From Styela clava (taxonomy: Eukaryota), in the NCBI RefSeq assembly GCF_964204865.1, contig NC_135252.1, positions 11,160,001 through 11,224,000 of the forward strand: a stretch of DNA of 64,000 nucleotides, read 5' to 3'. Of the stretch, positions 1 through 23,815 are shown in pieces. The notes below the pieces were generated by a model that saw only the letters and a list, made by a program, of their open reading frames with translations, ran no database searches and was not told the DNA's origin. Each line of letters opens with the position of its first letter. Position 1 is the first letter of the stretch. Made by a program: the position numbers and the translations under genes.

Positions 1-226
1 TTTGAAACGAAGTAAAAACTCAAACCAGAAGTTTAAGTTGAATAGCCTTGGCCAAATAACAAGTTACAGCTAATTTAATTATTCAAGGAATTTTCCGTTT
101 AATGTATTAGTAGAAACATTGTCATGATCTTGAATAGTCGAACGATGAAACCAAGATGTATGTGCCAAGTGCCATAGTGCATATATGCATGATGTAATCA
201 ATTTACATAAAAATATATCATCATAC

Positions 227-842: not shown

Positions 843-3800
843 CTACAAATATAAAAAAAAAATCAACATGGTATATAAATCGACTGGCTTAGATTCCGTT
901 TGAACTTTAGTAGGTTGAACATTGGGTTTATAGAGTCTTAAAAGATAACAATTCTAGAATCACAATTAGGGTTTTGTTTTTTATCAATTCTAAAAAAAAC
1001 ATCGTGTTTTAAATCAAATATTTTCTGTATTATTTGTATTTTTTATTGAAATACCCCCTGCATCGCCGCGAAACTACGCCAAAACGTTGCATTCTGGCAG
1101 ATGCACACGCAGCCGGAATTATAATTTCAAAATATAAGTAAAATTTTATAATTTGACTTTCGCTTCTATTGCGTACATTTATCGCCATGCTTGTATCTCC
1201 ACCAAAGTCATAAGATTATACCCGGAATGTTTAGCCGAGATATCAGAGAGACGTTTTGAGTAAGAAAAATTATGAAAATTAGCTCACGAGCCCACTACAA
1301 AAGCAATTAGATCAAGTGCAGCCCTCCGGCAAAACGAGTGGGTTGCGATAATGAAGAATATGCTCATATCGGCGGTAATCTACTAATATAAACGACGAGA
1401 CACCCTAGCGGCTAGGGTCACCATATTTAAAAAAGCAAAATTCCGGACAGTGCATGCTATTTTCATGACCTCGTAGTAAAAAATATGCGCACGGTACGAA
1501 ATAACAATGTTCTGTATTATCAGATTCCGGACATTTGAGCGTTTTTTAAATTCTTTCCGGACGCAAAATTTGACCCTAAATTCTGGACGGTATGGCAACC
1601 CTACCCTAGCTTAGCCTATGCTAATTGTAGGAGTCCTCGGATGCAAAGACGCCACAACTAATCTGTTATGACGCCTAAATATGGATTTCGAGTTCATGTA
1701 TTGACATTTTCCTCATAAAATGAGGGCATTATTACGGCTAATACTGTCCGGTTAATTTATGCTTAGCATGCTTTGTTTTCAAGGTTAAAGTGATGGAGCT
1801 TTTCAAGGTTATACGAACTCATTTATTCGATCGCATTTTCGCGATTTCAATTTTGGCAAGATGGTTTCGTCGCAACAGGCTCGTTCAATTAATGGCTTAT
1901 CGGTTGCGTCTTACTGCGCCAACCACTGAACTACAGCTTGAGAAGGTGTACATAAGCCTCTATCGATATTTGTGGCGTTTTGAAAGATTTATTGCAAATA
2001 AGAAGCGCTTGGCAAGTTTTTACGTCCATTTTTCTTCAACCTATTTAATACAAAAAAATCAAATAGTACAGCCATTTTGAACAAAAAAGGCATAAAAAAC
2101 TTGATTTAAAACAATTGTTTTAAAACAATTCTTTTTGAACAAATCCCTAATCACAATGCTTTGCTCTAGAATGTATTATGAATATCCATTTAACCTATCA
2201 TATAGCCTTTAGGAATTTAAAAATATAACAGTGAATGATACTTTCAACACTAACGATAAAATGCGAGAGATGTACACAGTGTCACCAGATGTAATGTTTG
2301 CAAAATTTATAAAATTATGCAAATTCGAAGATAAAATATTTAAGGTTCCGTTTGTTGTTTTGTTTATCAAATTTTTTAAAACGTAATCCATCAAAAACAA
2401 TCATAACTTATACCGTTATCGGTCAGTAAATGCCTATATCTGAATTATTTATATATTGATGTTTGCCCACGCGTAGGATGCTTCTTTGTCCTCTGGTGAT
2501 GATAGTTCATCCGCTTCATCAGCTTGATTGTGAACGGGTTGTAAATTCAGCTGTTGGTAGTTTGAATCATCAGGTATTTTATTTTTGTCCAATTCCCTAA
2601 AATACAAACAAATACAGTTTAAGAATCGTCGTCCAACGTATCCTGGCGATCCCGAAACACGATGTTTCTCACTAAACGTGTTTACTGAAATTTGATTCAT
2701 CTTTAGTAGTTCTTTTCAAATATTTCTGTGAAATGGCTCTGACAATTTGTGTTTTGAATAAAAACCAACAACTAGATTATTTAAATTAAAATTATTATTT
2801 TCAATTGATTCGTCATATTCAAGCAAGAATATGTTTTGTAAAATTGTTGCTTTATCTTGATAAACTGGCTAAAACAATTAATTTAGTAAAAGCAAATTTT
2901 GTGCCTAACCAAATTAGTTGTTAAATTACTATAATGGCCATATTTTGGTAGACGTTAGCTCACGCATAAAACATATCTTCGCCCTTTGACTGTTCATTGT
3001 CAACAGAAAATCCAGCAACGTCTTCAGCAGGCAAGAAACCATCATCATCAATTATTGCGTATTCGCTTCAGAATAAAAATAATCTGTTTTGTAAACCATA
3101 TTTGTATGTTCTTCTCCATTTGAGATATTGGTTAAGTGTTATTTGAAACGAAGTAAAAACTCAAACCAGAAGTTTGAGTTACCTTGGCCAAATAACAAGC
3201 TACAGCTAATTTAATTATTTAAGGAATTTTCCGTTTAACGTATTAGTAGAAACATTAAAATTGTCATGATTTTGAATAGTCGAACGATGAAACCAAGATG
3301 TATGTGCCAAGTGCCATAGTGCATATATGCATGATGTAATCAATTTACATAAAAATATATAATCGTACTTATTAGGCAAAATAACGGGCTTTCGATTATC
3401 AAGAACAACTTCTTCATATGTTCCATTGAAAGTTCCATTTGGTACAGGTGCTTTTCTGTAATAAATTGCAATGTTCAGTATTGTTGGATACCACATACCA
3501 ATAATACATTTTAATATGCGACATGGCAGGCAGTAAGATGAGAATTCTTGGATATAATTAGGTCCCGTTACCAGTGGTTAAAAGAGAAAAGGGCGACTTT
3601 TTGTCCCGTAAACACGAACACAACAACAACTTATGAAAATTGTACTCATACTTTATGTTAGAAATAATGAAATTCAAAATGAATTTTTTTTTTCGATTTT
3701 GTATAATATTCAATTGTTGGTAATGAAGTAAAGATAATTAATAATACGTGACTACCCTTCTTTGATATACGTCAAATTGTCTACAACTTACTCAACTTTT

Positions 3801-6800
3801 CGCTTTTCAGCCGGTTCATTTGTTTTCTGTCTGTAAATGAAATATTGTTGTGAGTTACTTGTTAGTTCGAGGAAGGTATCATGATGTTTGTTTTTTGTTT
3901 TACCTTTTATAGAAAAAATAAAATGCAATTCCGATGACAGCAAGTAAAACAAACACTCCTACGACTGCGCCGGCTATGGGACCTACAAATATAAAAATCG
4001 GTAAAATATATCAAAGTACTATATTTTAATCAGTATTATTTATCGTTCAGGAGGACCAAAAATGAACAATAAAAGGTATGAAAATAGAATGGAAACAGTA
4101 GCGTCTATTTTAAAATATTTTTTTTTACATCTGCAAGTCTTGTAACCAAGTTTATAAAATGAAGCATTTGAGTTTTTATGAATATGGAATTACATTTGTC
4201 TGAAGACATATAATAAATACCAACTATTGATAAAAAGAATTCTGATAAAATTGGTTTGCTCTGTTAGTTTTCAGAATATCGTTTCGCAGAACTATAGTTC
4301 CACAGAAAGACACACTGTTTTCGTTTATAAGAGTTAGCATTTACTTGATTGTACTTGTATACCTGAATGACTGACTCCTACTGTGGCTTTTTCATTACCT
4401 ATTTGCTATCCGCACAGAGAGAAACAACGTTGTTTAAAAATGTCATCATATAGGTCTCGATTACAAATTCTTGTTTACAAGTTGATGTAGTAAAAATGTA
4501 TATTCATATTCAAATTACAACCATCTCGATCATGATTCATTCACTACTATTGCGCATTATTTTTGTTTTGTTCATTAGCTCTGCGTACTTGTATCCATGT
4601 GCATGCATGATATACCCGTTTGATAGTTACCGGCATTGCTGGGTGAATTTTCCTTTGTTGGTGATATTGACTGCGTTATTTCGCTCAAATTCGGCTTATC
4701 GTTGGTTGCTGTAACAACAACATAATATTGAAACGATTGTTATGTCCACTACGTGTCCAAACAGACATAAAATAAAAATGGGACCATTGATACTAAAGAT
4801 CAGCATTTTCCAAACTTTTTTGGCCACGGAATACTTACGCTTTTTATCTCGCCTCGCGGAACACCAAAAATGAAAAGGTAAAATTGATAAAGAAAAATGG
4901 TGTATTGCAGCGGTCCCAAAAAGTGCGCTACTACAGTACTGTTGCCAAATGCGCCGCGAAAACTAACAAAAGTGTATTCAACATACCTAAAATATGATTG
5001 AATATTTGTGTATGTATGTCTGAAGAAGTCTGACCTTTGTCAGACGAAACGTTACAGGAAGATATTTGTGTTAGTGTGTAGCAAGACTCTTGAATCACTT
5101 AGGATTGTTATCTCTACTCTTGCTACAGCATCCTTGCAATATATGTCTACGGATCCACCGGCACAAAAGAATAGAAGAAGGATAAGTAGTTAGTCTCGCA
5201 GAAACCAAATAATCAGCGGATATTTTGCATATTGCATTCAAATGTTTATTGCTCCTTACTTTAAATGCTGTGTATCTGGATCAATAAATTCATTTTAACT
5301 TTCTTTGTCGTTTACTTTCTATTACGTAGTACGTAATACGTAGTACGTACTAGTACTTTGTTCAATTTTGCGAGCTGGAGTTTGTTTATCTGCTGAATCG
5401 AGTTTAGCGAACATGAGTGATTTTTTCATCATTTTCAAGTAAAATCAGGTAGAGCTTGAGAAAGAAGAGTTGACCTTTTGCATTTGTCCGCTTTAGGCCG
5501 ACCGTGACGCGATATTGAACGGTCGCTAGTTGTGCGACAACTTCACGATCCCGAGATAGCCATGGCGACCAATTTGGTTGTAATTTTGGTCCATTTGGAA
5601 GATGCTCGGGGAACACTAGTGTTACGCGGAACACAGTTTGGGAAACGCTGCTATAGATTATAGAAGGTAAATAGTAGATTATAAAATTAGTGAATGATTG
5701 GCTTCTGGCTATGAAACTAGCAACTGTATCTAACATATTTAAGACAGTGCGTAAACTTGAAATCTTTTAATAAATGGGTGGAATTTATATAAGTGCTAAC
5801 ACTTTTAACATTTAAATTAATACCTGCGTTTACTGTCGTCTCGGATATTGTTATTGGTATTGACGATGTCATTGATTCATCTATGTTAGCTGTTATAGAT
5901 ATTGTTCCCGTTTTCTCTACAATTTGTTGAACAGTACAATTCGGTGAAAAAAAAATATCCGTTCGCATTTAATATGATACAAAAAATAAAAATGTCAGAC
6001 GTCAAGGCATTTTGTATTTGCTTTTGTCAAATAACAATTTATAGTCCTTGTTCGTGGAATTATATTTCTGTCATAAAATATATCAGAAAAAAAAGATAAT
6101 AGGTTTTATCACTATTATTTTCCACGTATTTAGTTTTGCATTCTCAGTATAAATTATGAGTATTTAATAAAGTTATATGTAAAATTATGAAACATGCGTA
6201 ATATGTGATAAGCATGAAGATCTTGTGACCAAATATACATTTATATGCTATTTTATATACAGAACTATACCAAATATTATCAAAAAAGCCATTAACGTTA
6301 TCACTGATGACAAGTGCGATAGCCAAGGTAAGTGGGCTATTGAAACAATTATTATATTAAATTGAATTTCTGGTCGAATTCTGTTACCTGTAGTCGGCGG
6401 AGAACTTTCTTTAGTTGTTTCAACAGGTATTGTCGTTGTTTCTCGTGTTGTACTTCCATCTGTTGTGTACAGTATGTGTTTTATATTAATTTACACTTAT
6501 AAATTTGATGGGTTCAATATGGAGTCCGAATAAAATTATTCAGTTTCTTAATTTGATTCATCAAATAAGAATACATTTTTATGCAAATTCATTCTGAGTT
6601 TCGCCCCTGCTTTAGATGAATTCAATACACACCAAAGTTATTATTATATAGATATTCAGAGTTTTATGATAATTTCATCAATTTAATATTAATTTTGGAT
6701 GAGTACTGTGTTTCCCCGAAAATAAGACCTACCTGAAAATAGGACCTAGCATGAATTTTAAAAATATTTTTAATATAAGCCTCCCCTTAAAATAAGAGAC

Positions 6801-7884
6801 CAAGTCGATAGCGCAAAATTGTTTTTGACCTAGTCGATAACAAGAAATATTTCCCACTCGTTTTGACGGATTAATAATCTATGTTGTTTAGTAGTTATTT
6901 TAAATAAAAACGTGGTATTATAAGTAAATGGATATCGGTTTTCATATTTTGTATATTTGAAAATCTCGTAATTCTTTACTTTGTAATTTTGTTTTTGATA
7001 AATGGAGTTAAGGACATCCCCCGAAAATAGGCCCTAGCGTTATTTTTCGAAAGAAAATTGAAATAAGCCACTGTCTTATTTTCGGGTAAACACAGTATAG
7101 ATACTACTTGTAATATATGTCGAATTTGCCGTAGATGTTGTTGGTGTTACCGAGTAGGCTGTTGATGGGTCTGTTGTAACTTGCTGTGTAGTTGTATCTG
7201 CAAAAAAATCCATTACATAGCAGCGACAGATTATAATAGTATCTATAAAGATTAATCAGAAAAATTGGTATGTGGTAATTTTATTAATTTTTGCTGATTG
7301 AATTGAAAAAGTGTACAACGATTTATAAATCATTGCACAAAATTCCACCGAATAAAGAAATGCAATATAAATTTATCAAATAATACACATTATCTATTAT
7401 CATATTATGCTCTGATCTTGTTAGAATATAAAACGATTAGTCAATGGTTAATTGGCTATAGAACCCGCTAAAAAGATTTTAAAAGATATTTTTTTCATTT
7501 TCTTCTATCAAAACTTGAACATAAGGCTATTTTATTATTATTGAAAGAACTGTACCTACAAACTCAGTCGTAGGAATGTAAAGATCAAATTGCACTTTTT
7601 TCTATATTCTATACATTCGCAAGATTTCATGATAGATGTGCTATATTGTACAAATGAGAGATCATATCAAAAACAATAGGTAAGTAAAATTAGATTTTAC
7701 AATATTGAACTTGTGGAGGAGATTGGAGAGATTGAAGATTAAGGAGGAAGAGACCAACAACATCACGTTCAATAACATTATCCAAGCATGATTTGAAAAA
7801 TAGAAGATTCCTACCTGCACTGATATCCGCATTTATCAGCCAGCCACGACTAATCAATACGAAGATCAAAGATACAACAAACAT
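843..7884 (-). CDS. Receptor A: Ig-less mucin-like type-I membrane protein with multi-tyrosine cytoplasmic tail (~309 aa, 11 exons)
   Basis: Manual splice model: 7884-7815 (signal MFVVSLIFVLISRGWLINADISA); 7197-7108, 6459-6388, 5916-5824, 4708-4631 (Thr/Ser-rich); 3982-3904 (TM GPIAGAVVGVFVLLAVIGIAFYFFYKR); 3830-3792; 3455-3369 (GTYEEV); 3065-2964 (NEYAII..MFYA); 2596-2471 (EL..SNYQQL..ASYA); 936-843 (..DLYTML..*). Phases are consistent and the total is 930 nt. The donor at 7107 is weak and the 3' end is uncertain. Confidence 0.7.
967..2149. mobile_element. Non-autonomous hAT-like DNA transposon in the last intron of gene A
   Basis: Imperfect TIRs TAGGGTTTTGTT / AACAAATCCCTA; exact 8-bp TSD ATCACAAT at 959-966 and 2150-2157. 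Confidence 0.8.
1413..1603. mobile_element. Short MITE nested inside the hAT-like element
   Basis: TIRs TAGGGTCACCATA / TATGGCAACCCTA with internal CCGGAC repeats; no clean TSD. Confidence 0.65.
4801..5650. mobile_element. Non-autonomous hAT-like element in a gene A intron
   Basis: TIRs CAGCATTTTCCAAACT / AGTTTGGGAAACGCTG; flanks CTAAAGAT / CTATAGAT (7 of 8 match). The paralogous gene B intron (~13153) has the empty site CTATAGA. Confidence 0.8.
5010..5208. repeat. Interspersed repeat, second copy at ~34290-34445
   Basis: Shared TGTATGTCTGAAGAA...ATATTTGTGTTAGTGTG...GCTACAGCATCCTTGCA...TTAGTCTCGCAGAAACCAAA. Confidence 0.75.
6706..7095. mobile_element. Tc1/mariner(pogo)-type MITE
   Basis: TIRs CTGTGTTTCCCCGAAAATAAGAC / GTCTTATTTTCGGGTAAACACAG flanked by TA on both sides, with internal GAAAATA(A/G)G sub-repeats. 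Confidence 0.8.
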
Positions 7885-8785
7885 AATACAAATCTTTTTA
7901 TCTAGTTATTGTATTTTGCAATAATATATTATATTTTTACTAGTCAACATGGTTACATCGCATCTTAATCATACATTACCTCCTGAAAATGATAATTGTA
8001 AATATTTGAATACCGACCTCGTTCATTTATATTGTAATTAAATGTCTTAGCGTTTGCTTTGATCATGAATGAATACTCTAGTCTAGTCCAACATACACCA
8101 ACCTAGATGCTCTTTGTTATTTGAAGATATTCGATGGAAATTTAAAAAAAAATGGAAAAAAATATATATATATATTCGATGGCCTACATTAATTTGTGTG
8201 TTGATTTCACGAGCGTGCTGGCGATTCATCGCTGATATAAAATACAACAGTTTATTGTTTATTTCAATACCATTGCTTCACAAAAGTTGCCTGAGGAAAA
8301 AATATACACCCTTTCCGAACCGAATAGTCAAATATCACAAATTATTGTCCAGTTTAAAATTTCACAATAGAAGTGTTACAGCGTCCCATAGTCAGTTGAA
8401 CACACTAAAATCAATGTGCTATTCAGCTGTCACAAACTTGCATAAAGGTTACAGTGAAGCGAAATGATCTGGAGACAATTTTTATTAGATCTACTCAACC
8501 ACAAATGATGACAATCCCAAACAGAATTCTAATCAGAATCATATCGACACCCAGGCATTTGTGCGAACTTATTAGACTATCCTTCATATAACAACTTGAG
8601 GGAAATCTTTCCACTGAATTTGTGTAACTTTCTTATGAGGACCTTCATGTACCCTTCTCTTCGCACCTTTATGTAATAAAACTAAGTTATTTGTATATTG
8701 TCAGATGGAGCAAAACCAGCCCCTGGAAAAAACATCATCGAACAATTTCTCTATCAGCGCATGATTGCCACCAGGTATATTCATG

Positions 8786-9010
8786 TCGATGATAAATAAA
8801 GCACAGCCGGTGTATAGCAAAACGATGTAATTTACCGACGTTTCGTATTTCTATTCAGAATAACTTCATCAAGACATGATATGAAAGCACACTAACGTAT
8901 ATATAGAGAGAGAAAAGCAAGAAGAAAGAAAAAATTATCACGTCAAATTCGAAACGTCCGCAAATTACATCGTTTTGCTACACACCGGCTGTGCTTTATT
9001 TATCATCGAC
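8786..9010. repeat. ~65-bp-arm inverted repeat (foldback), possibly Penelope-like retroelement derived
   Basis: GTCGATGATAAATAAAGCACAGCCGGTGT..GCAAAACGATGTAATTT..GACGTTTCG and its reverse complement at ~8945-9010. Confidence 0.7.
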
Positions 9011-9379
9011 AATTTCTCTATTGTTGTATATGTTTCATTTAATGGGGAACAACTGCAACGTTTTGACTCCAACATTCCTCCACCATAACCATACGTGTTT
9101 TCATTTATTTATTCGAATAAAGACATCATAGTAAGCTAAAAGGTATATTAGGTGGAAGGCGAAGTTATATTGTGGCATAATATACAATCAATCAAGTTCA
9201 AACATTGTATCTTACTAGTATGATTCATAGCAATGTTCTTGAAATGTTGAAAATATCAAACAATAATATAAAAAAATATTAAACAGTTCTGTATAATATA
9301 TAGTATTTAATCTTCAAAATATTGTAGAAATCCATGTAAGATTTACAGTTTTCTTCATCTTGGCATACACAGTAGGTTT

Positions 9380-12300
9380 TCACTCGTCATTCTCAACGAA
9401 ACTATTAATGTCTCCACTTTTCTTTGATTTGTTTACCCTGGTGAAATGTTGATAAGATATCAGATAATTCATTTTAAGTATCTGTAGATTTTTTATAATA
9501 CCATTCTGAATATATAGGGATATTTGACTTGGCACCGAAGTGCCGATAAATATCAGATATTTATTATTCACTTCAAATCAGTATTTGTATTGAAGTTCAC
9601 TATCGTTCAGACGTTAATTTTCAAATGCTAAAAGTGTAGCAGTGTATAAAAATCTCTGAAAGTGACATTCCGCGATCACAGCAAAGAAAGCGATACTATT
9701 GACTATACATGTCTGGTTCGGCTCAAGATGACCATGTTATAATATGTCTATAATATAGATATCAATTTAATACTTACATGGTATATAAACCGACTGGCTT
9801 AGATTCCGTTTGAACTTCAGTAGGTTGAACATCGGGTTTATAAAGTCTTAAAAGAAAACAATTCCATTTTTTATCAAATATTTAGAATTTGCCAAACACT
9901 ATGCCCATGTATTTCCTTATATATATAAAGATCAGTGGTATTACAAACGATGTTTTTTGTGAAATTGATGAATACAGAGATAATGGATCATCTGTTTCCT
10001 CTTTCCCTGTTACCTTCTCGAGTAAGCGTTACAATAGGTTGACCTACTGGCAGAATTGTCTGAACAGACTTCCTGGCGGTGTCATGTACAGGTTATCAAG
10101 CTCTATATGCGGAAATTTCATGACGTAGTACGTACTACGCGTTGGTTGGTAGTTCAACGCAAATTGTGTTAAATATATGCAATTATTGCATCGTATGATA
10201 CAAGTACTAAAGCCTATATTCGTGCCTTGCAACTGATAAAAGTTTCTGTCCGCTCACAACGATTGAAAAATTAACAAGATACTCTGGCTGTCCATTTGTT
10301 ATGAAATGAAGACGGTTGAACTATATGTTGTGTACTTCAGGGTTTAGAAACTCGTTTATTTATTTTCTGTTATCACCTGTTATAAAGTACTTCGTCATCC
10401 GGATTTTCTGGCTCAGCTTGCGTATGAACGGATTGTAGATTCAACTGTTGATACTCTGTATCGTCGACGTTACTATTTTGATTCAATACTCTAAAACATA
10501 TTTAGGTTATGGGTTCGAAATAAAAATGAGTGTAGAATTTTAATTCTGAAAGCCAATGTTTTGCTTTTAAATGTGTTATGAAAATTCATTTACCTTATAC
10601 TATAACCTTCAAGAATCTGATAATATAATAAGTTATGAAGCAGAAGTAATTAGCCCTAATGATAAAGTATGAGAGACACACACAGTCTTACCGGCTATAA
10701 TATTGGCAAATTATATACAATTGTGCAATTGCAAAGATAAAATATTTAGGTTCCGTTTGTTGTTTTATTTATCACATTTTTTAAAAACACAACCTATCAA
10801 AAGCAATGTTTAAATAAACCGTTATCAATCAGTAATTGCCTATATCTGAATTATTTATATATAGATGTTTGCCCACGCGTATGATGCTTCTTTGTCCTCT
10901 GGTGATGATGGTTCATCCGCTTCATCAGCTTGATTGTGAACGGGTTGTAAATTCAGCTGTTGGTAGTTTGAATCATCAGGTATTTTATTTTTGTCCAATT
11001 CCCTAAAATGCAAATAAATACAGTTCAGGAAGTGTCCAAAGTATCCTGGCGATCCCGAAACACGATGTTTCTCACTAAACTTGTTTATGAAAATTGGATT
11101 CAACTTTAGTAGTTCTTTTCAAATATTTGTGTGCAATGGCTCCGAACAGTTTATGTTTTGAATGAAAACCACCAATTAGTTTATTTAAATTAAAATTATT
11201 CTTCAAATTATTATTTAAATAGATTAGTCATATTCAAGCAAGAATATGTTTCGTGAAATTGCGTTTGGGCAAAATTCCTATAAAACCGCACGGAAGTGAA
11301 ATTAAAATATGCATCACTGTTTTAGTGCTTCATCTCGATATACTGGCTAAAAACAATTGAGTAAAAGCAATTTTTTTGTACATAACCAAATCAGTTGGTA
11401 AATTACTATAATGGTCATATTTTGGTAGACGTTAGCTCACGCATAGAACATATCCTCGTCCTTTGACTGTTCATTGTCAACAGAAAATCCAGCAACGTCT
11501 CCAGCAGGCACGTAACCATTATCATCAATTGAGGCATATTCGCTTTAGAATAAAAATAATTTATGTTTGTAAAATCATATTTGTATGCTATATTTAAAGT
11601 ATTTATGAATCGCTATTTGAAACGAAGTAAAAACTCAAACCAGAAGTTTAGGTGGAATTACGTCGGCCAAATAAGTTAGGCTAATTTAATTATAGGAATT
11701 TGTCGTTTGATGTACTATATTATTGAAAACGATGAAACCAAAACGTATATGCCAATACTATATTATATACTAACCAAAAAGACCTAATTTGAATTATTCA
11801 CAGAAATATATATCATCATACTTGTTGGTCAACACAACGGGCCTTCGATTATCAAGAACAACTTCCTCATATGGGTCATTGAAATTTCCATTCGGTACAG
11901 GTGCTTTTCTGTAAACATTAACAATAAAAATAAATTAGAATTAGGAATTCCAGCACTCTATAACAATACATTCTCAATATCCATTAGGACAGAGTTTAGA
12001 ACACAAATACACAAATATATGGACAAGAAGTTTTGTGTATAGGCTACAACCTAGTAAACAGTGATTAAAAAAGCCGACTTAGGAAAACGGAACATAGCAT
12101 TCCTTCAAATTTAAATAGAGATATTCATTTTGATTTTGTAAAATATTTGATTACTGGTTATGAAGTAAAGATAATTAATAGTATGCTACTACCATTCTTT
12201 AATATATGTCACTTGTCAACAACTTACTCGACATGTCGCTTGTCAGCCGGTTTGTTTGTTTTCTGCCTGCAAATGAAATATTGTTGTAAATTACTTGTTA

Positions 12301-14726
12301 TTTTGTGGATTGTATCGTGATCTTTATTTTTTTTTTACCTTTTATAGAAAAAATAAAATACTATTCCGATGACAGCAATTAAAACAAACACTCCAACGAC
12401 TGCGCCGGCTATGGGACCTACAAATAAAAATAAAAATAAAATCGTTAAATATATGGTAGTAATGATTTTAATCGGTATTATTTATCGTTCAGAAGGACCA
12501 AAATGAATAAAAAAGTTTCCATTCAAAAATATTGCTTTCTACACATGCATGCTTTGAGTCTCATGATCACGTTTATAAAGTGAATTATCTGAGTTTTTAT
12601 GAATACGCAATTACATTTTTCTAAAGTCACATCATAAACAACAACTACTATTAGAAAGAATTGTTGTAAAATTGGATTGCACTATTAGTTTTTGAAATAC
12701 CATTTGCAGACTTATACAAAAATACGCATTGTTTGCCAATATAAGGGTCAGCTATGTATTCTCAACTTTAGCATTTTCATTACATATTTGCTATCTACTC
12801 AGAAAGAAACAACGTTGTTTAAAAATTTCATCATATAGGTCTCGATTCCAAATTCTTGTTCAAAAGGTGATGTAGTAAAAATGTATATTCATATTCAAAT
12901 TACAACCATCTCAATCATGATTCATTCACTGCTATTGCACAACATTTTTCTATTAACTCTACATATTTGTATACATGTACATGCATGATATTCTTGTTTA
13001 CTAATTACCGGCATTATTGGGTGAATTTCCCATAGTTGATGGTATTGTCTGCGTTGTTTTGCCCAGATCGTTGGTTGCTGTGGAAATTCATGAACTGTAA
13101 ATTGGCTCATTATATAAATAAAAATGAAAAATAAAAAAATGGAACCTTTGATACTATAGAAAGTAAATTCTAGATTATGAAATTAGTAAATAATTGTGGC
13201 TTATAGATGCATGTTGTGAAACTAGCAATTGTATCTGACATGTTTATGACACTGCGTAAACTTCACAAAATGGATATGTTTTTGCTAACACTTCTCACAT
13301 TTAAATTAATACCTTCGTTTACTGTCGTCCCAGATGTTGTTATTGGTATTGACCATTTACTTGTTTCATATGTGTTAGTTGTTATAGATATTGTTCCCGT
13401 TTTATCTACAATTTATTGAACATTGGAAATGTATTGATTCAGTGGAAAAATTATTTGTTTGCATTTAATATGGTACAAAAAATAAAAATATCAAACGTCA
13501 AGGCATTTCGTGTTTGCTTTTGTCAAATAACATTTTATAGTCCCGACTCCTGGTTTGTGGAATTATATTTCTGTCATAGAATATATATATCAGTAAAAAA
13601 GATATTAAATTATATCACTATTAATTTGCAAATAATTAATTTTATATTGTCTATATAAATCATATGTGTTCATACCGCTGGTGTGTTCTGTTGACGGAGA
13701 AGATGTTGGATTACACTCCGGTACCGTTGATGTACTGGGTGTACTTGATGAAGCTGTTTGTTTGAATATAAAAAGAAGTTGTTAAAGAAAGGTTCTCGAT
13801 AAAATAGTCATGTAAAATATAGCGTTTGACCTGGCTATGTTAGCGTAGTATGTTGAAAATTTCAGCTGAAACCCTATCCCTATCACCTATCGTGGGGTAT
13901 AATAAAATAGGTAGGCAAGGCACAAGCGAGATACTTTCTTCAATTCTTTTTGAAAAGTGGCACTTTAAGTATCAGTGACATTCAGGAATTTGTTCGGAAA
14001 GAAAATGTGAAAACGTATCATGACAAGATATTATAGGCTTTAGATTCCCTTAATTATTATTTCTGTTTTTAATTTTTACAATCTTACGTTTAAATATAAG
14101 TTTCAATTGCCTAATCTAAGTCATTTGATGGTTTTCGAGCTCTGAGATAAAAATAAAAAAAATCCTAATATTCAATCAAAGTACAAAATATGTTAAATTA
14201 ACTGAGAATTAGACATAAATTGTTTGTTTTGATGAAACGTGATTTTCATATTTAAAGAATTCACACCAGACTTACCTATTACGCATACTAGTAAATCTCT
14301 CTCTCCATAGTTTGAAGATGTATTGACTTTACATGAATATTCACCGGAATCTGTCAATGCTACATGCTTAGGAAAATATATTCCCCCGTTGGTTTGATAA
14401 ACAGAACAGGACTGACTTTTGCTAACTTCGACATTATCTTTCCACCAACTTATTGATGATGTTGATGAGGAATATGAACACCTTATGGAATTGGAATTTG
14501 TATCGAAGTTGTCGGTATCCAATTTGAAATAGTCGGTATTCGGATTAAAAGTAATATCTGTTATAAGATAAAACGAATGTTGTTGATCACTATAGCACAG
14601 AAGACACATAGGTCAAAATATTTGCAACTTACCGCCACTGATATCATCTGAATATATTTCCGAAAACAAATGAAAACCAATTAATAAGATGATTATGTTC
14701 AATGAATTATTGGCGTACTTCAACAT
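9380..14726 (-). CDS. Receptor B: signal peptide - single Ig domain - Ser/Thr stalk - TM - long tail with ITIM/ITSM-like tyrosine motifs (~429 aa, 13 exons)
   Basis: Exons 14726-14633 (signal); 14557-14276 (Ig: C..SWWK..DSGEYSC); 13753-13676, 13405-13313, 13077-13009 (stalk); 12417-12339 (TM GPIAGAVVGVFVLIAVIGIVFYFFYKR); 12266-12228, 11908-11822, 11542-11441, 11002-10877, 10490-10377, 9846-9778, 9437-9380 (tail). All introns are GT-AG and the 1290 nt are in frame. Motifs: DPYEEV, NEYASI, MFYAEL, SNYQQL, ASYAVL, TEYQQL, VLYNRL, GLYTMV. Confidence 0.85.
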
Positions 14727-15813
14727 TTGTTTGTCGCTTGTTCACTCGTCCTTCGCTATTCTTCACCTTGTATACATTCTATGCTTCATTTGAATATTAT
14801 CACCAAAACATCTAGATTTGATCACTATTAAAAGATTGAGATGCAAAATCAGATCAGATATTAAAAAAGCATTGTCAATTTTAATAAAATTATGATCTGA
14901 ATTCTGAACATGCGCACACTAAATATTGAACGAAAAACTTTTTTGTTTTATCGGCTCATCCTGAAAATTACTAAATCAGCTATGCCAAACCAAAAATCTG
15001 AATCACTTAGTGCAATTAATCGGATGCCAATCATATTCCAGCACTCTTGCCTCCGTCTGTTATTAACAAACTTTATATTCTGCACAGCTAATGGACATTT
15101 GATCTATATTTACCTACACGAAGATTAACTTTACCCATCCAACTAATAACATTTATTTTACAAATACATCTATTGCAAGGCATAGGCAGAGTGCATTTTT
15201 ATCTAATTTGGCTCCAAGTAAGTATTCAATGATTCATTAAGAAACTATCTTTAGTTTTAGACCATTTAAGAATCAAACGCTAAAATAACACAAACAAGCT
15301 AAATAAACTGTGTGAATGTGGTATGCTGCAATTAAAATAGCAAACGTTTACTGGCATTTTCAATACCTCCTTTTTTCGTTTATAGTGAAAGTGCAAATAA
15401 TTCACTGATCTTAATATTCAAATCCCATTCTACACGATTTGTTATTGCTTGATTCAGGCTAAAACTGAATATTTAACCGATGCCAAACTTCATTCATTAC
15501 TATATAAATAAAAGCACTCAAGTAGTTTCTGTACATCGAATTTCACTAAACTCGAATTAAAATTCTGTTGGCGCCTTTTTGGTATGCTTTTAATTTCATG
15601 AAAACATTCTCATAGAATTCAGTTCCCAGCCCTAACCTAATCTAAAAAATCACTGAGATCACACAACCGCTGAGATCGTCCCACTAAACCATTCTGTTTA
15701 TCACAACCTGTAATGCATTTTTTTAATCCTATAATAAGGTACTTTTTGGATCGGACTAAAACATTACATATAGTCTAACCTTAATTAATACCATTGCTTG
15801 GCAAACAAATTTA

Positions 15814-15923
15814 GGTACTCCTGAAGTATGCGCACCAAGATGTGGCATAACCTGAACCCTAACCTGGTACACAACCTGATTTCAGGTTGTGCGCCATCTT
15901 GGTGCGCATATTTCAGGAGGTCA
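15814..15923. mobile_element. 110-bp palindromic MITE (Merlin-like termini)
   Basis: Arms CTCCTGAAGTATGCGCACCAAGATG / CATCTTGGTGCGCATATTTCAGGAG; starts GGTAC; flanked by direct repeat CAAATTTA. Confidence 0.85.
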
Positions 15924-16013
15924 CAAATTTATTACAAAAGTGGTATAAATATGAGCAGAGCACTAGACCGATCATAGCTCCTAACTAGATCTGGGATCCC
16001 AATAACCTATATG

Positions 16014-16642
16014 TAGGGCTGGGAATGGTTAACCGGTTAATAGGTTAACCGATTTTAAATGGTTAACGGTTACGATTTATTTTAACCTTTTATTTTAACT
16101 GACATCTCAGGTACAAATCATCTTTATAATGTACATTTTTTTCAAAAATGATTACGTCATCGCAAATTTATTTCAGTGGCGTTTAATTCAGAAAAATATC
16201 ACTAACTGTATTGGTAAGGACCGAATAAATGTGAAAAATAATTCAAAATTGCTAAATATGAAAATTTGACAATGATAAATTCAGAATCACTTTTCAGTCG
16301 AAATATATTGTTCACGATTTTATTGAAAAATCGTATATTCAATGTCATCCAACAATTGCGCAGTTGATGCTGTTTTTCCTCATGATATCTCAGAGTAGAA
16401 CTTGCACGCCCGAAGAACGCTGTATATCTCTTGCAGCAGAGCGATCATGAAACTATCTCCATTCGTGAATAATTTTGAGCGATACCGGGACAAGATCACG
16501 CGAAATTGTTTTGTAACCATTGTGACGTAACAAGCTAAAATCATAAATTATTACGTCAAACGTCACGCTGCGGTTTATCGGTCAACCGGTTAATTTCACC
16601 CTGTTGACGGTTAAAGTGTTTCCCCCGAAATTCCCAGACCTA
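16014..16642. mobile_element. hAT-like non-autonomous element
   Basis: TIRs TAGGGCTGGGAAT / ATTCCCAGACCTA with subterminal GGTTAACCG-type repeats at both ends; TSD not evident. Confidence 0.65.
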
Positions 16643-19600: not shown

Positions 19601-20014
19601 TGAAACTAAATTCTAATCTGATGGAAAAAAATAATAATTATGTAGGAAAAATATCTTTTTATTAGATTTGATTCAAAACAATTCTTTCAATTAACATTAT
19701 GTTATGCCCTGGACTGTTATTGCGCAGGACTTAAATTAAGATGTTAATTTAGTTATTTTTAATGATATGGTATTTTATTAGAATTCAGCATCATTTAAAT
19801 GCTACTAAATGATTGTAGTCTCTAATTGAGATGATCGAATTTAATCCCACATGTCAAATTACATGCTTATCTTTATATCAGTGGTCAAGTATAACATTGG
19901 AGTTTGGTTGGTAATAATATTAGAATTTGACTTCTACAAATTTAGTGTAACAAGCTAAAATATTTACCTCATGAACTCCATCATATGTCAGTATGATAAT
20001 ATACTTTGTATTTT

Positions 20015-23000
20015 CTAAGCGTTTTCATACTCATAAATAATTTTCTCCTGGTTTTTGTTCAAGCTGCGAAAACATAAACGTAACATAGTAAAGAACGGTT
20101 TCGAAACAACCAAATTAATTGATCTTTTTTCTTACTTTTCATAATACGGTGGCCGTTCGGAGATATTTGGATTGTGTGTAATATATGCACTAGGTTCATA
20201 CCCGTCTTCTTCGATGACATTTGAATATGTTCTAGAATGATTTTGGTTGAAAATTAGTTCACTATAAAATTATATTTGACGTCAAATGTTTTTGATAATG
20301 TAGAAGATATCTTATTCAGACACCTGCAAGATATCTTATTCAGACATCTTGTTTGCTTGTTATGATTTAGTCTAGAAAATTATTGTGTTTATCAAACTGC
20401 AGTTCGCGAAAATGCCGTTTGAGTGTGCATCCACGATTGAGATACATGTTTTCAAGTGGTTTAGATTTTGTTCCTAAAAATAATTAATGTATAAATTTTA
20501 CCTATTGCCCTCTGAGGTATTATTGGACGCAGTTGGTGGATTAGACGAAATCTCGTGATAATGTAGGGATTCCTCAAGCACAACATCCGATTCAGGAACA
20601 TTTTTCGGTGATCTATATTGAAATTAAATAATTAGATTCAAAATTGAACTGACTTTAGCATTATTATTTTGTATAAACTACACGCCTTATTAACAGTTTC
20701 AGTGTGATTAACTAAACTAAACAGCGATTGAAAGAACATTTCGATTTTTTGTTCTAACATCATCAAAATTCAGAAATAAAAGATACATACTCTTAACATT
20801 GTATCTCTGGAGTAAAATTATATAACATTTGTTTTTGCTATTGTAACTTATTTGATTGCTGGCAATGAATTAAAAATAAACAACTGTTTGTTGCTATTAT
20901 CTTTCATGCCTAATCATCAATAACTAACTCACACGACGTTCCGTTCCGTGGGTTCGTTTGTTTTCCTTCATGACAATAAAATATTATTGTGAAATAAAAG
21001 TTACTTACAGAAATGTACCGTGATCTAAATTTTTTGTTTTACCTTTTATGGAAATAAAATACAATTCCGATGATGGCAATCAACACCACTACTCCTACGG
21101 CTGCGCCTGCTATGAGGCCTGCAGATATAAAAGTATATTGAATATTTGAAGAACAATATTTTAAATGGTATTACTTACCAAGCAGAAAGCAGCGGTATCA
21201 AACATTTAAAGCACGACATGTTAATATCACGAATGGTCACAAAAATTGCTGAAAACATCGCCCTTGGTTATTGTGCGATTCTTTTACAACCATCTCGGCC
21301 GAGGTGATTTTCTAACATTCAATATTATTTCACACCATTTTTTATCAGCTCCACATACATGAACATATATGCATATACACACATTCGGTAATTACCGGTA
21401 TTGTTGGGTAAATTTTCTGTTGTTGATTTTATTTTCTGCGTTGTTTCGCTCAGATTCGTCTTGCTTGTTTCTGTGGAAAATAAAAATCTCTGATTGTCTA
21501 AATATATATATATATATACGACGAATGGAAAATGGGACCATCGATTAATTAAAAATGCTTCTCGAATGCCTGTTTTGTATTATTTTTACAATTTTACCCT
21601 TGGAAGAAACCAAATAACATCGACCTAAATGCAGTATATTATTTTAATTTTAAATTGTTATGAATATATTCACCAAGAAGTGAGAACGGCGAGTCTTAGT
21701 TTATCACTTATCGATCTCGATAAGTATGTTGATAGGTATTTGTCTGTCTGTTTGTTTGTCTGTTAGATGCACGCGATATCTCACAAAAGCAAAGTTGGAT
21801 CTACTCCAAATTTTGCATGTGCATTCATCATATCCCGGACCAGAAGTCTATTGATTTTGGAAGATTTATGTCATATAATTAGCAGTTATTCATTAATTAG
21901 TGATGGAACACACGATGTCGCTAAGGAGTGAGAGTGGATTAATCGAAACTGCAGTTTCTGTTTTGGGGGATCCCCTAACTTTCGATCGATAAGTTTTCGG
22001 TCTCCGACCGATATTCTCGTTTTATAATTGGCTCATTAATGATTACTGCAAAACTTGGAATTGTACTCGTACAAGTTTTTCCAACGCGTAGACAAGGGCT
22101 CTTCAACCTGGAGGTCTCGACCGATCGGGGGGCCACAAAAGGAATCAATGGGAGTCGCGGTGATATATTTGTTGCACTAACTCATGTTGAAAAAAAATTT
22201 CCATCAAGTTTTAAAGATTTGTAACCTGTACTGAGAGGCACCAAGACATGATTAGATTTTTTGTGCGAAAATAAATAAGCAAGCCTGTCTCATCAAAAGC
22301 ATTGTCAGTTTTTTCAATATTTTCTGTATTATTAAATTTCACTTCATTTTTAACTTTGTTCCTGGCGGTCGCGAAAAATTTGGCCGCGCCGAGTGGATCG
22401 TGATGAAAAAAGTTTGAAAACACTGGCTTAGACAAAAATCTCTTTTAACAATCGGTTGATATTTATGTCCTGACAGACACAATTGGAATTCGAATACATA
22501 CCTGCATTCACTGTCGTTATGGTTATTGACGATCTTGTCGTTTCATTCACGTCTTTGAAAGGAGTAGATGTTGGATTACAAGCTGGGACCGTGGATGAAG
22601 ACGGTGTACTTGCTGAAGCTGTATGTTTGCATGCAAGAAAACAATTCAATTCGCTAAAGAATATTCTCAGGTCAATAGTTAGTATTGGAATATGGCGTTG
22701 GACTTGGCCATGTAGGCGTCGTATGTTTACGGGTCGAAATCCAATCCACCTCATCAGAATATGATAAATAGGGTAGACAATACGGATCCGAAAAGCTTCC
22801 AACCTTTCTTAAAATGCTGCTCTTTGCATATCAGTGACGCCTAACCAGATAGAATGGATTAAAATATTAACATAACATTATATTAAATATATCGATAAGA
22901 AGATAAAATTAGACACCTGCTATTAGTTCAATGAAATTAGAGCAAAAACTATATATATATATATATATATAGATGATTAGTTAACCGGAAGAACTCATAT

Positions 23001-23815
23001 TTCCCAATACAAAACAAAATGTATCTGAGGATGGCCTCCAGCGTTTTTATACAAACTCTGATAAATATATATTACTGATGACGTTGAAAATATTTTAGAA
23101 TTTACCTATAATGCATACTAATAAATTTTTCTCTCCAAGGTTAGAAGATGCATTGACTTTACATGAATAATCACCGGAATCTGTCAGTGCTACATGTCCA
23201 GGAAAATATATTCTCCCGTTGACTTGATAAGCAGAATCGAACTGACGTCCGCTAACTTCGACACTGCCTTTCCACCAGCTTATTGAGGTTGATGAGGAAT
23301 ATGAACATATTACGGAATTGTGGTTTATATCGAAGTTGTCGATATCCAACTCGAGATAGTCGCTATCCGGATGGAATAGAATATCTGATTATAAACATGT
23401 TGAGTTGCAATTTAGCACAGATAATTTCAAAATTTTGTTATCATGTTTCAACAAACTTCATTCTACGTGGGAGATATTTTTGCAATGTTGGTTTGGGGCT
23501 CAGAATTGTGTGTAAGCCAATACAAAGAATAAAACTCATCATATGTAAGGAACTCACATTAAGTACGTTACCGATCTTAATAAAGCACATAAGATGAATT
23601 GTCCCTCATATTTTTTTATATTTCAGTTAGTCACTTTTACATTCTGAGCGAAACGGTTTAATTTTGATAAAATAAAGGAAAAGAATCCATGGGGACATTC
23701 ATGTAAATTGTGTACAGTACTTGCCTCCACTTATATCAGCGCAATTTGTATCCGAATGAGTAAAAATGAAATATAAGATAACAGCACATGAACCTATGTT
23801 CTTTTGCTTCCACAT
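20015..23815 (-). CDS. Receptor C: signal peptide - single Ig domain - Ser/Thr stalk - TM - tail with one ITIM-like and three YxN motifs (~308 aa, 9 coding exons)
   Basis: Exons 23815-23725 (signal; GC donor GCAAGT); 23384-23106 (Ig: C..SWWK..DSGDYSC); 22618-22502; 21470-21396; 21118-21043 (TM GLIAGAAVGVVVLIAIIGIVFYFHKR); 20965-20933; 20612-20502 (LHYHEI); 20231-20136 (TYSNV, GYEPS, PYYE); 20063-20015 (NL..IIYEYENA*). 927 nt in frame. Possible 3'UTR exon from 19380 with AATAAA near 19320. Confidence 0.85.
21670..22021. mobile_element. Helentron-associated (HINE/DINE-1-like) interspersed element
   Basis: Internal (TGTC/TGTT)n microsatellite, TTATCGATC / GATCGATAA subterminal inverted repeat, 3' hairpin TCGGTCTCCGACCGA followed by a T-run. 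Confidence 0.55.
22093..22425. mobile_element. Degenerate hAT-like MITE
   Basis: Ends CAAGGGCTCTTCAACCT / AGTTTGAAAACACTG with subterminal GGTCGCG-like motifs. Confidence 0.5.

What the first reader, a model, noticed from the sequence alone, without database searches (positions are those of the whole stretch)
2160..23815. Gene B is a mosaic: ectodomain like C, TM and tail like A
Seen: B and C share a closely similar Ig exon and first stalk segment (ASSSTPSTSTVPECNPTS vs ASASTPSSSTVPACNPTS), but their tails are barely alignable. B and A are collinear including introns from ~13.65 to 10.55 kb versus ~6.15 to 2.16 kb, yet A's 5' exons are different. Inference: unequal recombination or gene conversion in a phase-1 stalk intron swapped recognition and signalling modules, the mechanism that produces paired receptors.
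Basis: partly seen in the sequence, partly recalled or inferred. Interest (0 to 1): 0.8.

Follow-up and report, generated by a model that had tools for sequence, protein, structure and literature searches.

The report
Chimeric receptor gene from tandem duplication
In a small cluster of single-Ig membrane receptor genes, a tandem duplication that cut through two neighbouring genes created a new, expressed hybrid gene (A, not B as first proposed) joining one gene's front end to the other's membrane and signalling end; this is a clear but ordinary example of how receptor families shuffle modules.

Summary

- **B is not the mosaic.** B is collinear with C from the leader through the Ig, stalk and membrane exons to the first tail exon. 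Ig is 83% nt identical, the TM exon 82%, and the TM→t1 intron 76%. B's module combination is therefore old.
- **A is the mosaic.** In A, homology to B's tail (2154-6157 vs 10554-13663) abuts, within 12 bp, homology to the 5' half of a fourth gene, Y, which lies just left of the window (6169-8100).
- **Both tracts belong to two head-to-tail units.** These are [B tail + intergenic + A 5'] and [A/Z tail + intergenic + Y 5']. Their divergence is similar throughout (K2P 0.15-0.20; dS 0.15 vs 0.13).
- **This is the footprint of one tandem duplication.** Its breakpoints fell in two phase-1 stalk introns, leaving A as the junction gene.
- **The junction is expressed.** A spliced transcript contig crosses the hybrid intron (6388|5916).
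- **Later events.** A lost its Ig exon through a ~650-bp deletion, and part of its tail was duplicated again (Z, with a dead TM exon).

This kind of event is well known from KIR genes, the Botryllus Fester-family and FcoR genes, and Drosophila chimeric genes.

An earlier follow-up in this scan covered the adjoining Z tail.

The parts
10855..14726 (-). Gene B coding region: an intact parental gene, not a mosaic.
   Evidence: Exons (all with AG/GT boundaries): leader 14726-14633; Ig 14557-14276; stalk1 13753-13676; stalk2 13405-13313; stalk3 13077-13009; TM 12417-12339; t1 12266-12228; t2 11908-11822; t3 11542-11441; t4 11002-10855 (stop). The model rests on homology and phase; no RNA was laid on B.
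20015..23815 (-). Gene C: an older paralogue of B, collinear with it from the leader to t1.
   Evidence: Exons: leader 23815-23731; Ig 23384-23106; fused stalk 22618-22502; stalk3 21470-21396; TM 21118-21043; t1 20965-20933; predicted t2 20612-20502, t3 20231-20136 and t4 20063-20015.
2449..7884 (-). Gene A coding region: the chimera. It combines a Y-type leader and stalk a/b with B-type stalk2/3, TM and tail, and has no Ig exon.
   Evidence: Exons: leader 7884-7815; stalk_a 7197-7108; stalk_b 6459-6388; stalk2 5916-5824; stalk3 4708-4631; TM 3982-3904; t1 3830-3792; t2 3455-3369; t3 3065-2964; t4 2596-2449. RNA contigs join 6449-6388|5916-5824|4708-4629|3980-3904 and 3436-3369|3065-2963.
6141..6220 (-). 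Junction of the tandem duplication, where A switches from Y-like to B-like.
   Evidence: blastn tracts end at 6169 (A~Y) and 6157 (A~B). This is also shown by the three-way alignment A1 and by 40-nt sliding identity. DNA contig X2 record 12 spans 6062-6440 without any difference.
5917..6387 (-). Hybrid phase-1 intron of A. Its donor and first ~220 nt come from Y's stalk_b intron. The rest, and the acceptor, come from B's stalk1 intron.
   Evidence: It has GT..AG ends and is removed in spliced contig X1 record 4.
13663..13675 (-). Breakpoint position in the B-type parent: the first ~12 nt of the intron after stalk1.
   Evidence: The B exon ends at 13676, and homology to A begins between 13670 and 13663.
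6169..13663 (-). Duplication unit U1: B stalk2-to-tail, the intergenic spacer and A's 5' exons.
   Evidence: It is collinear with unit U2 (A 6157→3997 and onward through Z 857, the intergenic spacer, then Y's 5' part to G000:C3:11151811), with K2P 0.15-0.20 throughout.
2149..6157 (-). A's B-type stalk2-to-3'UTR block, which is the start of unit U2.
   Evidence: K2P to B is 0.190±0.009. Pooled exon values are dS 0.15 and dN 0.10.
7715..7755 (-). Scar of the Ig-exon deletion in A.
   Evidence: Y carries ~650 bp here (window -5304..-5956), including its Ig exon (-5626..-5931). A has 27-39 unrelated bases instead.
14276..14557 (-). Ig exon of B (phase 1-1).
   Evidence: Pfam scores against cut-offs: Ig_2 29.3 bits (27), I-set 24.2 (23.7), ig 22.2 (21.8).
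23106..23384 (-). Ig exon of C (phase 1-1).
   Evidence: It is 71% aa identical to B's. The Pfam ig score is 19.5 bits, below the cut-off.
22502..22618 (-). C's single stalk exon, equal to the 5' half of B stalk1 fused in frame to the 3' half of stalk2.
   Evidence: Read directly from the sequence and from tblastn.
1..866 (-). Z: a partial second copy of A's TM-to-tail block, which continues left of the window. Its TM exon (842-764) carries an in-frame stop.
   Evidence: K2P to A is 0.049. The stop is seen. The junction of this later duplication lies at 857/866.
955..2148 (.). Dispersed repeat with terminal inverted repeats that replaces ~709 bp of A's 3' flank.
   Evidence: 40 scored copies at 82-91% identity out of 912 candidates in the genome.

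Best explanation
The locus holds a small, genome-unique family of type I receptors. Each has a signal peptide, one Ig domain, a Ser/Thr/Pro-rich stalk built from symmetric phase-1 exons, one TM helix, and a tyrosine-motif tail built from phase-2 exons.

Originally a B-like gene lay upstream of a Y-like gene. One tandem duplication of ~7.5 kb then occurred. It started ~5-12 nt into B's intron after stalk exon 1 and ended ~216 nt into Y's intron after stalk exon b.

B and Y stayed intact on the flanks. At the joint of the two copies a third gene, A, was created. A has Y's promoter, leader and outer stalk exons, and B's inner stalk, TM helix and ITAM-like tail. Both broken introns were phase 1, so the hybrid intron splices in frame.

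Three later events followed:
1. A ~650-bp deletion removed A's Ig exon.
2. A transposon replaced part of A's 3' flank.
3. A's TM-to-tail block was duplicated once more, giving Z, which is dead.

B and C are an older full-length duplicate pair whose distal tails have diverged.

Shown: the homology tracts, the abutting breakpoints, equal divergence across the units, intact exons, and the spliced junction transcript.
Inferred: the order of events, the non-homologous mechanism of the breakpoint, and any signalling function.
For: 1. In A, the A~Y tract (6169-8100) and the A~B tract (2154-6157) abut within 12 bp.
2. The tracts extend across gene borders as two adjacent head-to-tail units. B tail + intergenic + A 5' (13663→6169) matches A/Z tail + intergenic + Y 5' (6157→…→-8189).
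3. Divergence is similar all along the units. K2P is 0.190 (T_A~T_B), 0.164 (T_Z~T_B), 0.204 (intergenic) and 0.146 (5' parts). Exon dS is 0.15 (A-B tail) vs 0.13 (A-Y 5'), Fisher p=0.81.
4. B is collinear with C through stalk3, TM and t1, at 77%, 82% and 73% nt. The TM→t1 intron is 76% identical, and the t1→t2 introns are 319 and 320 nt.
5. Y has its own TM exon ~300 bp beyond the homology end, only 28-40% aa identical to the A/B/C type.
6. Spliced contig X1 record 4 joins 6388|5916, 5824|4708 and 4631|3982 at GT-AG sites. In the TM exon it shows none of Z's letters at the six sites where A and Z differ. No retrocopy exists in the assembly.
7. DNA contig X2 record 12 spans the junction.
8. 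All A and B exons are open with canonical splice sites, and the hybrid intron keeps phase 1.
Against: - K2P differs somewhat between blocks (0.146 vs 0.204, about 3 SE). One event is therefore assumed together with regional rate differences or later conversion.
- No outgroup species or pre-duplication haplotype was available, so the order of events rests on parsimony.
- C lacks the intron that holds B's breakpoint because its stalk exons are fused. B-C collinearity therefore cannot be followed base by base across the breakpoint.
- B's mRNA and the 5' end of A's mRNA (leader to stalk_a) were not observed.
- Y's tail exons could not be defined.
Confidence: 0.85

Rival explanations
1. B is the recombinant: a C-like 5' half (Ig + stalk1) joined in the stalk intron to an A-like TM and tail. 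A's combination would then be ancestral.
For: B is closest to C in Ig and stalk1 and closest to A from 13663 downstream. The homology switch in B lies right next to the stalk1 donor.
Against: - C itself has the A/B-type stalk3, TM and t1, so Ig plus this TM is not a new combination.
- The A~Y tract would have to end, by coincidence, within 12 bp of where the A~B tract ends.
- The homology of B's 3' flank plus A's 5' half to Z's 3' flank plus Y's 5' half would need further events.
- The only other gene with an A-type 5' half (Y) has a different TM.
Confidence: 0.04
2. A began as a complete duplicate of Y. Its TM and tail were later overwritten by a long gene conversion from B.
For: Conversion-like patches between the A and Z tails are seen in another sample, so conversion may operate in this cluster.
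Against: - A conversion tract should be flanked on both sides by Y-like sequence. Downstream of A's tail there is no Y-rest-like DNA. There is a transposon, and then the Z tail followed by the intergenic spacer that matches B's 3' flank.
- The tract would have to be more than 4 kb and would have to include B's 3' flank.
Confidence: 0.05
3. An additional, non-exclusive event: the B and C Ig exons were homogenised by a short gene conversion. That would make B's Ig 'more C-like' than the rest of the gene.
For: B-C dS is 0.25 in the Ig exon, against 0.52 pooled over stalk1, stalk3, TM and t1 (Fisher p=0.047). The leader exons are almost unalignable, at 42% nt.
Against: - Against stalk3 plus TM alone the difference is not significant (p=0.22).
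- The TM→t1 intron is 76% identical, similar to the Ig exon.
- The similarity stops at the exon borders, which fits selection better than a conversion tract.
- Counts are small.
Confidence: 0.2
4. The A junction is an assembly artefact.
For: Tandem paralogues are prone to misassembly. The 95%-identical A/Z pair could be a false duplication of two haplotypes (unresolved).
Against: - The junction is covered by a DNA contig from run X2, whose haplotype differs from the assembly elsewhere.
- It is also covered by a spliced RNA contig from a run of another study.
- The units differ by 15-20%, far above allelic divergence.
Confidence: 0.02

Closest known systems
KIR hybrid genes formed by unequal crossing-over in the human KIR complex (PMC2816608)
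   Same: A tandem cluster of Ig-type receptors. Recombination between neighbouring paralogues yields an intact hybrid gene, with one gene's extracellular exons and the other's TM and tail exons.
   Different: KIR hybrids arise by homologous misalignment of very similar genes and segregate as polymorphisms. Here no extended homology is visible at the joint. The parents (B, Y) are distant (Ig 42% aa), the product is old (K≈0.15-0.2), and it has since lost its Ig exon.
Botryllus schlosseri Fester-family and FcoR genes (PMC12582321)
   Same: Ascidian IgSF membrane receptors in tandem clusters. That paper infers intergenic recombination 'mixing and matching' ectodomains and intracellular domains from incongruent trees, and FcoR tails carry ITIM or hemITAM motifs. 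The acidic-plus-YxxL motif here (DDSNYQQL) resembles their hemITAM-like motifs.
   Different: FcoR has an Ig-Sushi-Ig-Ig ectodomain, and Fester-family proteins have Ig + Sushi. The genes here have one Ig and a mucin-like stalk with no sushi exon. Sequence relatedness was not tested. Here the event is resolved to the breakpoint rather than inferred from trees.
Chimeric genes at tandem-duplication joints in Drosophila (PMC5460883)
   Same: [quoted passage not shown] The parents stay intact and the chimera inherits the downstream gene's promoter.
   Different: Those are young, segregating variants of unrelated neighbouring genes. Here the parents are paralogues with the same exon-phase plan, which is why the product is a well-formed receptor.
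Anti-Lepore-type haemoglobin fusion genes (textbook knowledge, not checked here)
   Same: The duplication product of an unequal exchange between adjacent paralogues, giving parent 1, then a fusion gene, then parent 2.
   Different: The globin exchange is homologous and lies within coding sequence. Here it is intronic and apparently non-homologous.

Membership tests
Immunoglobulin superfamily (Ig domain) | A match to Pfam Ig-clan models at the curated cut-off | tested here: met
   B exon: Ig_2 29.3 (cut-off 27), I-set 24.2 (23.7), ig 22.2 (21.8). Y exon: I-set 24.6 (23.7), ig 23.5 (21.8). C is below the cut-off (19.5) but 71% aa identical to B.
Immunoglobulin superfamily (Ig domain) | Conserved Cys...Trp...(D-x-G-x-Y-x-C) core residues within one phase 1-1 exon | tested here: met
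   Read from the exon translations of B, C and Y. No structure was predicted.
Junction chimera of a tandem duplication | Two independent homology tracts abut inside the chimera | tested here: met
   A~Y ends at 6169 and A~B starts at 6157.
Junction chimera of a tandem duplication | Both parents are retained intact on the flanks, and the duplicated units lie head to tail without a spacer | tested here: met
   B lies upstream and Y downstream. Units 13663→6169 and 6157→…→-8189 are adjacent. Y's tail exons are undefined.
Junction chimera of a tandem duplication | Equal age of all parts of the two units | tested here: met
   K2P is 0.146-0.204 across blocks. dS is 0.15 vs 0.13 (p=0.81). There is mild heterogeneity between blocks.
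Junction chimera of a tandem duplication | A transcript spliced across the joint | tested here: met
   X1 record 4 joins 6388|5916 at GT-AG sites.
Junction chimera of a tandem duplication | The pre-duplication state is seen in an outgroup or another haplotype | not testable with these tools
   No related eukaryotic genomes are held, and only one read-laying run is allowed.
Paired activating/inhibitory receptors | Closely similar ectodomains with different signalling tails | tested here: inconclusive
   B and C have 71% aa identical Ig domains and unalignable distal tails. A and Y share a leader and stalk but have different TM exons, and A has no Ig domain.
Paired activating/inhibitory receptors | The activating member has a short tail and a charged TM residue for an ITAM adaptor | tested here: not met
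   No charged residue is present in the TM exons of A, B, C or Y, and the tails of A, B and C are long.
Paired activating/inhibitory receptors | Opposite signalling and a shared ligand | not testable with these tools
   This needs experiments.
Canonical ITAM | YxxL/I followed by 6-8 residues and a second YxxL/I | tested here: not met
   Read by eye across the exon translations of A and B, the spacings are YxxV-x14-YxxI and YxxL-x10-YxxL. These are ITAM-like only.
Botryllus FcoR | An Ig-Sushi-Ig-Ig ectodomain | tested here: not met
   There is a single Ig exon followed by stalk exons, with no sushi exon between the leader and TM. The architecture is taken from PMC12582321.

The most novel reading that the evidence does not exclude
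The cluster is a working module-exchange system of an invertebrate chordate. Intron-phase-compatible illegitimate recombination repeatedly re-pairs recognition and signalling modules, giving functional pairs. B and C would be one pair, with similar Ig domains but ITAM-like versus ITIM/YxN-type tails. Y and A would be another, with the same promoter and stalk but different TM and tail. The Ig-less A would serve as a ligand-independent, ITAM-like signalling subunit, analogous to vertebrate adaptor chains.
Probability: 0.12. Interest if true: 0.6.

Novelty: new member of a known kind. Interest (0 to 1): 0.3.

Why it matters
This is a cleanly resolved natural example of exon shuffling in an invertebrate-chordate receptor cluster. 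It has two parents, the junction gene, a breakpoint narrowed to an ~80-bp window (6141-6220; blastn tract ends 12 bp apart), a hybrid intron and a transcript across it. It shows concretely why symmetric phase-1 stalk exons make such families recombination-tolerant. It also gives an anatomical counterpart to the intergenic recombination that was inferred only from trees in Botryllus allorecognition receptors. It does not reveal a new mechanism, and no function of these receptors is known.

Tried and rejected
- **Y's cytoplasmic exons.** I tried to define them by phase-2 exon enumeration and by tblastn with the B and C tail exons. Nothing convincing emerged, so Y's tail stays undefined.
- **Homologues of C's distal tail exons.** I looked across the 50-kb region and found none. 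A weak similarity between C's t4 and the degenerate extra last exon downstream of B and Z (E≈2) was not pursued.
- **Global alignment of B/C introns against shuffled controls.** Only the TM→t1 intron and the 3' end of the Ig→stalk1 intron are clearly homologous, so intron-based breakpoint mapping between B and C is not possible.
- **The Ig-deletion region.** MAFFT global alignment placed the gap poorly. The boundaries come from the blastn and tblastn tracts instead.
- **Earlier-findings look-ups.** One word query was malformed and another added nothing.
- **Searches not run.** I did not run the large protein searches, structure prediction or atlas search.
- **Spliced models.** Exons were searched one by one, and motif spacing across exon joints was read by eye.
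Full report
**Setting**

All genes of the finding lie on the minus strand of an AT-rich (about 33% GC) window with no N runs. The window is G000:C3:11160001-11224000. To see the left neighbour I fetched 20 kb to the left (L001, L002). I give those positions as negative window coordinates, where genome position = 11160000 + coordinate. An earlier follow-up of this scan names the organism as the ascidian Styela clava. I did not verify that.

**Checking the observation**

Both quoted peptides are present, at 13754-13701 (B) and 22619-22566 (C). A blastn self-comparison gave these results:

| Comparison | Coordinates | Identity |
|---|---|---|
| A vs B, four blocks, introns included | 2154-6157 vs 10554-13663 | 76-84% |
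| B vs C, Ig exon | 14272-14566 vs 23102-23394 | 83% |
| B vs C, first stalk exon plus ~100 nt of upstream intron | 13696-13854 vs 22561-22727 | 72% |
| B vs C, further downstream | 12923-13152 vs 21316-21545 | 70% |
| B vs C, further downstream | 12128-12430 vs 20833-21131 | 72% |

The claim that the B and C tails hardly align is therefore only partly right.

**Gene models**

I located exons by paralogue conservation at protein level, by reading splice sites and, for A, from transcript contigs. All exons have AG/GT borders.

| Gene | Exon order |
|---|---|
| B | leader, Ig (phase 1-1), stalk1, stalk2, stalk3 (all phase 1-1), TM (phase 1→2), four phase-2 tail exons t1-t4 |
| C | same plan, but stalk1 and stalk2 are fused in frame into one exon (22618-22502) and the distal tail differs |
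| A | leader, two stalk exons (a, b) not found in B or C, then stalk2, stalk3, TM, t1-t4 of the B type; no Ig exon |
| Y (left of the window) | leader, Ig, stalk a, stalk b, then its own TM exon (-8506..-8584) |

Pfam recognises the Ig exons of B and Y at the curated cut-offs. C scores just below but is 71% identical to B. In the whole genome the Ig exon type occurs only in B, C and Y. The last tail exon occurs only in B, A and Z. This is a local four-gene family plus one dead fragment.

With the left flank added, blastn shows that [-8189..866] is collinear with [6169..12440] at 72-90%. Z's partial tail, the spacer behind it and Y's 5' exons correspond to B's tail, the spacer behind B and A's 5' exons.

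A's tail block (2149-3997) is 93-94% identical to Z (-1045..857). If that later A/Z duplication is undone, two units lie head to tail with nothing between them:
- U1 = 13663→6169 (B stalk2-to-tail, spacer, A 5' half).
- U2 = 6157→…→-8189 (A/Z stalk2-to-tail, spacer, Y 5' half).

A three-way alignment and 40-nt sliding identities show the switch directly:
- A is Y-like (78-95%) down to about 6260.
- A is B-like (72-93%) from about 6140.
- Each comparison is at random level on the other side.

A tandem duplication X-U-W → X-U1-U2-W leaves X|U1 and U2|W untouched and creates one new joint, U1|U2. Here X|U1 is gene B, U2|W is gene Y, and U1|U2 is gene A. A is therefore the chimera, and B and Y are the intact parents.

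**Equal age of the parts**

| Comparison | K2P |
|---|---|
| A tail vs B tail | 0.190±0.009 |
| Z vs B | 0.164±0.011 |
| the two spacers | 0.204±0.012 |
| A 5' vs Y 5' | 0.146±0.011 |
| A vs Z | 0.049±0.005 |

Nei-Gojobori values on exons agree. A-B tail exons give dS 0.15 and A-Y 5' exons give dS 0.13, with Fisher p=0.81. The spread between blocks is about as large as that between the two comparisons that must be equally old (Z-B and A-B). I read it as regional rate variation.

**B is not a new combination**

| Module | B-C | A-B | A-C |
|---|---|---|---|
| stalk3 (nt) | 77% | 82% | 79% |
| TM exon | 82% nt, 79% aa | 95% nt | 82% nt |
| t1 (nt) | 73% | 83% | 77% |
| TM→t1 intron | 76% | 85% | - |

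The t1→t2 introns of B and C are 319 and 320 nt. Y's TM exon has the same length and phases but only 28-40% aa identity to the A/B/C type. In both the Ig partition and the TM partition, B and C are close to each other and both far from Y. With only three taxa this is a distance statement rather than a resolved tree. Only A changes partner: it groups with Y in the 5' half and with B in the 3' half.

The one hint of extra history between B and C is a lower dS in the Ig exon, 0.25 against 0.52 pooled over the other shared exons. This gives p=0.047, but p=0.22 against stalk3 plus TM alone. That is at most weak evidence for a short Ig-exon conversion.

**The breakpoint**

- In B, homology to A starts 5-12 nt after the donor of stalk1 (the exon ends at 13676).
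- In Y, homology to A ends 216 nt into the 532-nt intron after stalk b.
- Both introns are phase 1, so A's hybrid intron (6387-5917) keeps the frame.
- I see no shared stretch longer than a few bases at the joint. The event therefore looks non-homologous, although 15-20% later divergence limits that statement.

**Expression and reality of the joint**

- A 348-nt contig of run X1 aligns as 6449-6388 | 5916-5824 | 4708-4629 | 3980-3904. All three joins fall at GT-AG sites once the third is shifted by 2 nt.
- In the TM exon, where A and Z differ at six sites, the contig's single difference from A (3935) is not one of them, so it shows none of Z's letters.
- The assembly holds no intronless copy of these exons. 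The contig therefore comes from spliced A mRNA, even though the run's RNA label is only a guess.
- A contig of run X8 joins 3369|3065. X1 contigs cover the 3' end (2243-2596) with A-type letters.
- A DNA contig of run X2 spans 6062-6440 without a difference. X2 differs from the assembly elsewhere, so it is at least partly independent.

**Later events in A**

- Where Y has about 650 bp, including its Ig exon (-5626..-5931), A has 27-39 unrelated bases (7715-7755). B, C and Y all have the Ig exon at this position, so A lost it. The exon is phase 1-1, so the frame survives.
- A dispersed repeat with inverted ends (955-2148; 40 scored copies out of 912 candidates) replaces about 709 bp of A's 3' flank.
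- The block from just upstream of the TM exon to about 800 bp past the stop was duplicated again. The joint is at 857/866, giving Z, whose TM exon has an in-frame stop.
- At 95% identity this last duplication could also be a false duplication of two haplotypes. I could not decide that, and it does not affect the main inference.

**What the proteins look like**

The following is read from the exon translations.
- B and A tails carry YxxV-x14-YxxI and YxxL-x10-YxxL arrangements. The second is assembled across the t3/t4 joint. There is also an acidic-plus-YxxL motif and a further C-terminal tyrosine.
- C's predicted tail carries one motif that fits the ITIM consensus and several YxN-type sites.
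- None of the spacings is canonical for an ITAM. One B/A motif also fits the ITIM consensus. No TM helix has a charged residue. 'Activating versus inhibitory' therefore cannot be assigned from sequence.
- B and C have one cysteine in stalk1, which could make covalent dimers. A and Y lack it.
- dN/dS is near or above 1 in the stalk exons, about 0.7 in the B-C Ig exon, and low in the tail exons. The last exon is 97-98% identical among A, B and Z although its flanks are 75-90% identical.

**Comparison with what is known**

- Hybrid receptor genes made by unequal exchange between tandem paralogues are well documented for human KIR (PMC2816608).
- Chimeras at the joints of tandem duplications that ignore gene borders are common in Drosophila (PMC5460883).
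- In the ascidian Botryllus, the Fester-family and FcoR IgSF receptors are reported to diversify by intergenic recombination that mixes ectodomains and intracellular parts. Their tails carry ITIM and hemITAM motifs (PMC12582321).
- The present genes do not have the FcoR or Fester-family domain architecture, and relatedness was not tested.

The event found here is therefore a new, well-resolved member of a known kind.

**Verdict**

Interest is modest.

Noticed in passing
window 1-866 and L002 8955-10000: Z is a partial second copy of A's TM-to-3' block (95% identical). Its TM exon (842-764) has an in-frame stop. The joint of this later duplication is at 857/866. It could be a recent tandem duplication or a false duplication of two haplotypes.
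   Followed up: partly
window 955-2148: A ~1.2-kb dispersed repeat with inverted ends (40 scored copies at 82-91% identity, 912 candidates genome-wide). It sits exactly where A lacks ~709 bp that B and Z have in their 3' flanks.
   Followed up: yes
window 10391-10486; L002 8780-8857: A degenerate extra copy of the last tail exon (53-58% aa identical, keeping the acidic-plus-YQQL motif) lies ~370 bp downstream of the stop codons of B and Z. A lost it with the transposon-associated deletion. It may be an old exon duplication or an alternative last exon.
   Followed up: no
window 22502-22618: C has a single stalk exon that equals the 5' half of B's stalk1 fused in frame to the 3' half of stalk2. 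This is loss (or never-gain) of the very intron in which B's breakpoint lies.
   Followed up: partly
window 7150-8140: DNA run X2 covers the rest of gene A at depth ~15-45 but has no contig at all here. This region holds A's leader, the Ig-deletion scar and part of stalk_a. It could be a filter effect or a structural difference in that individual.
   Followed up: no
window 2504-2628 and 3361-3504: X2 contigs laid on A's tail carry Z's letters in patches and A's letters between them. This suggests gene conversion between the A and Z copies, or shared polymorphism.
   Followed up: partly
window 2449-2596, 10855-11002; L002 9248-9395: The last tail exon is 97-98% nt identical among A, B and Z, while its flanks are 75-90% identical. 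dS is only 0.04-0.12, so there is strong constraint or local conversion.
   Followed up: partly
window 4713-5650 and 6704-7064: Very high contig depth in all four runs marks high-copy repeats inside two introns of A. They account for the gaps in the A~B and A~Y alignments.
   Followed up: no
L001 7900-8359 (minus strand): A long open exon with Ig-like hallmarks (C...W...Y-x-C) belongs to a further gene downstream of Y. It matches the family's Ig exon only at chance level.
   Followed up: no
window 15813-15922, 29451-29559, 50860-50960, 53265-53361: A ~100-bp element is present in both orientations at four places (76-94% identical) and looks like a small inverted-repeat transposon.
   Followed up: no
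window 13701-13715 and 22566-22580: B and C each have one cysteine in the first stalk exon, a possible interchain disulfide. A and Y have no stalk cysteine.
   Followed up: no
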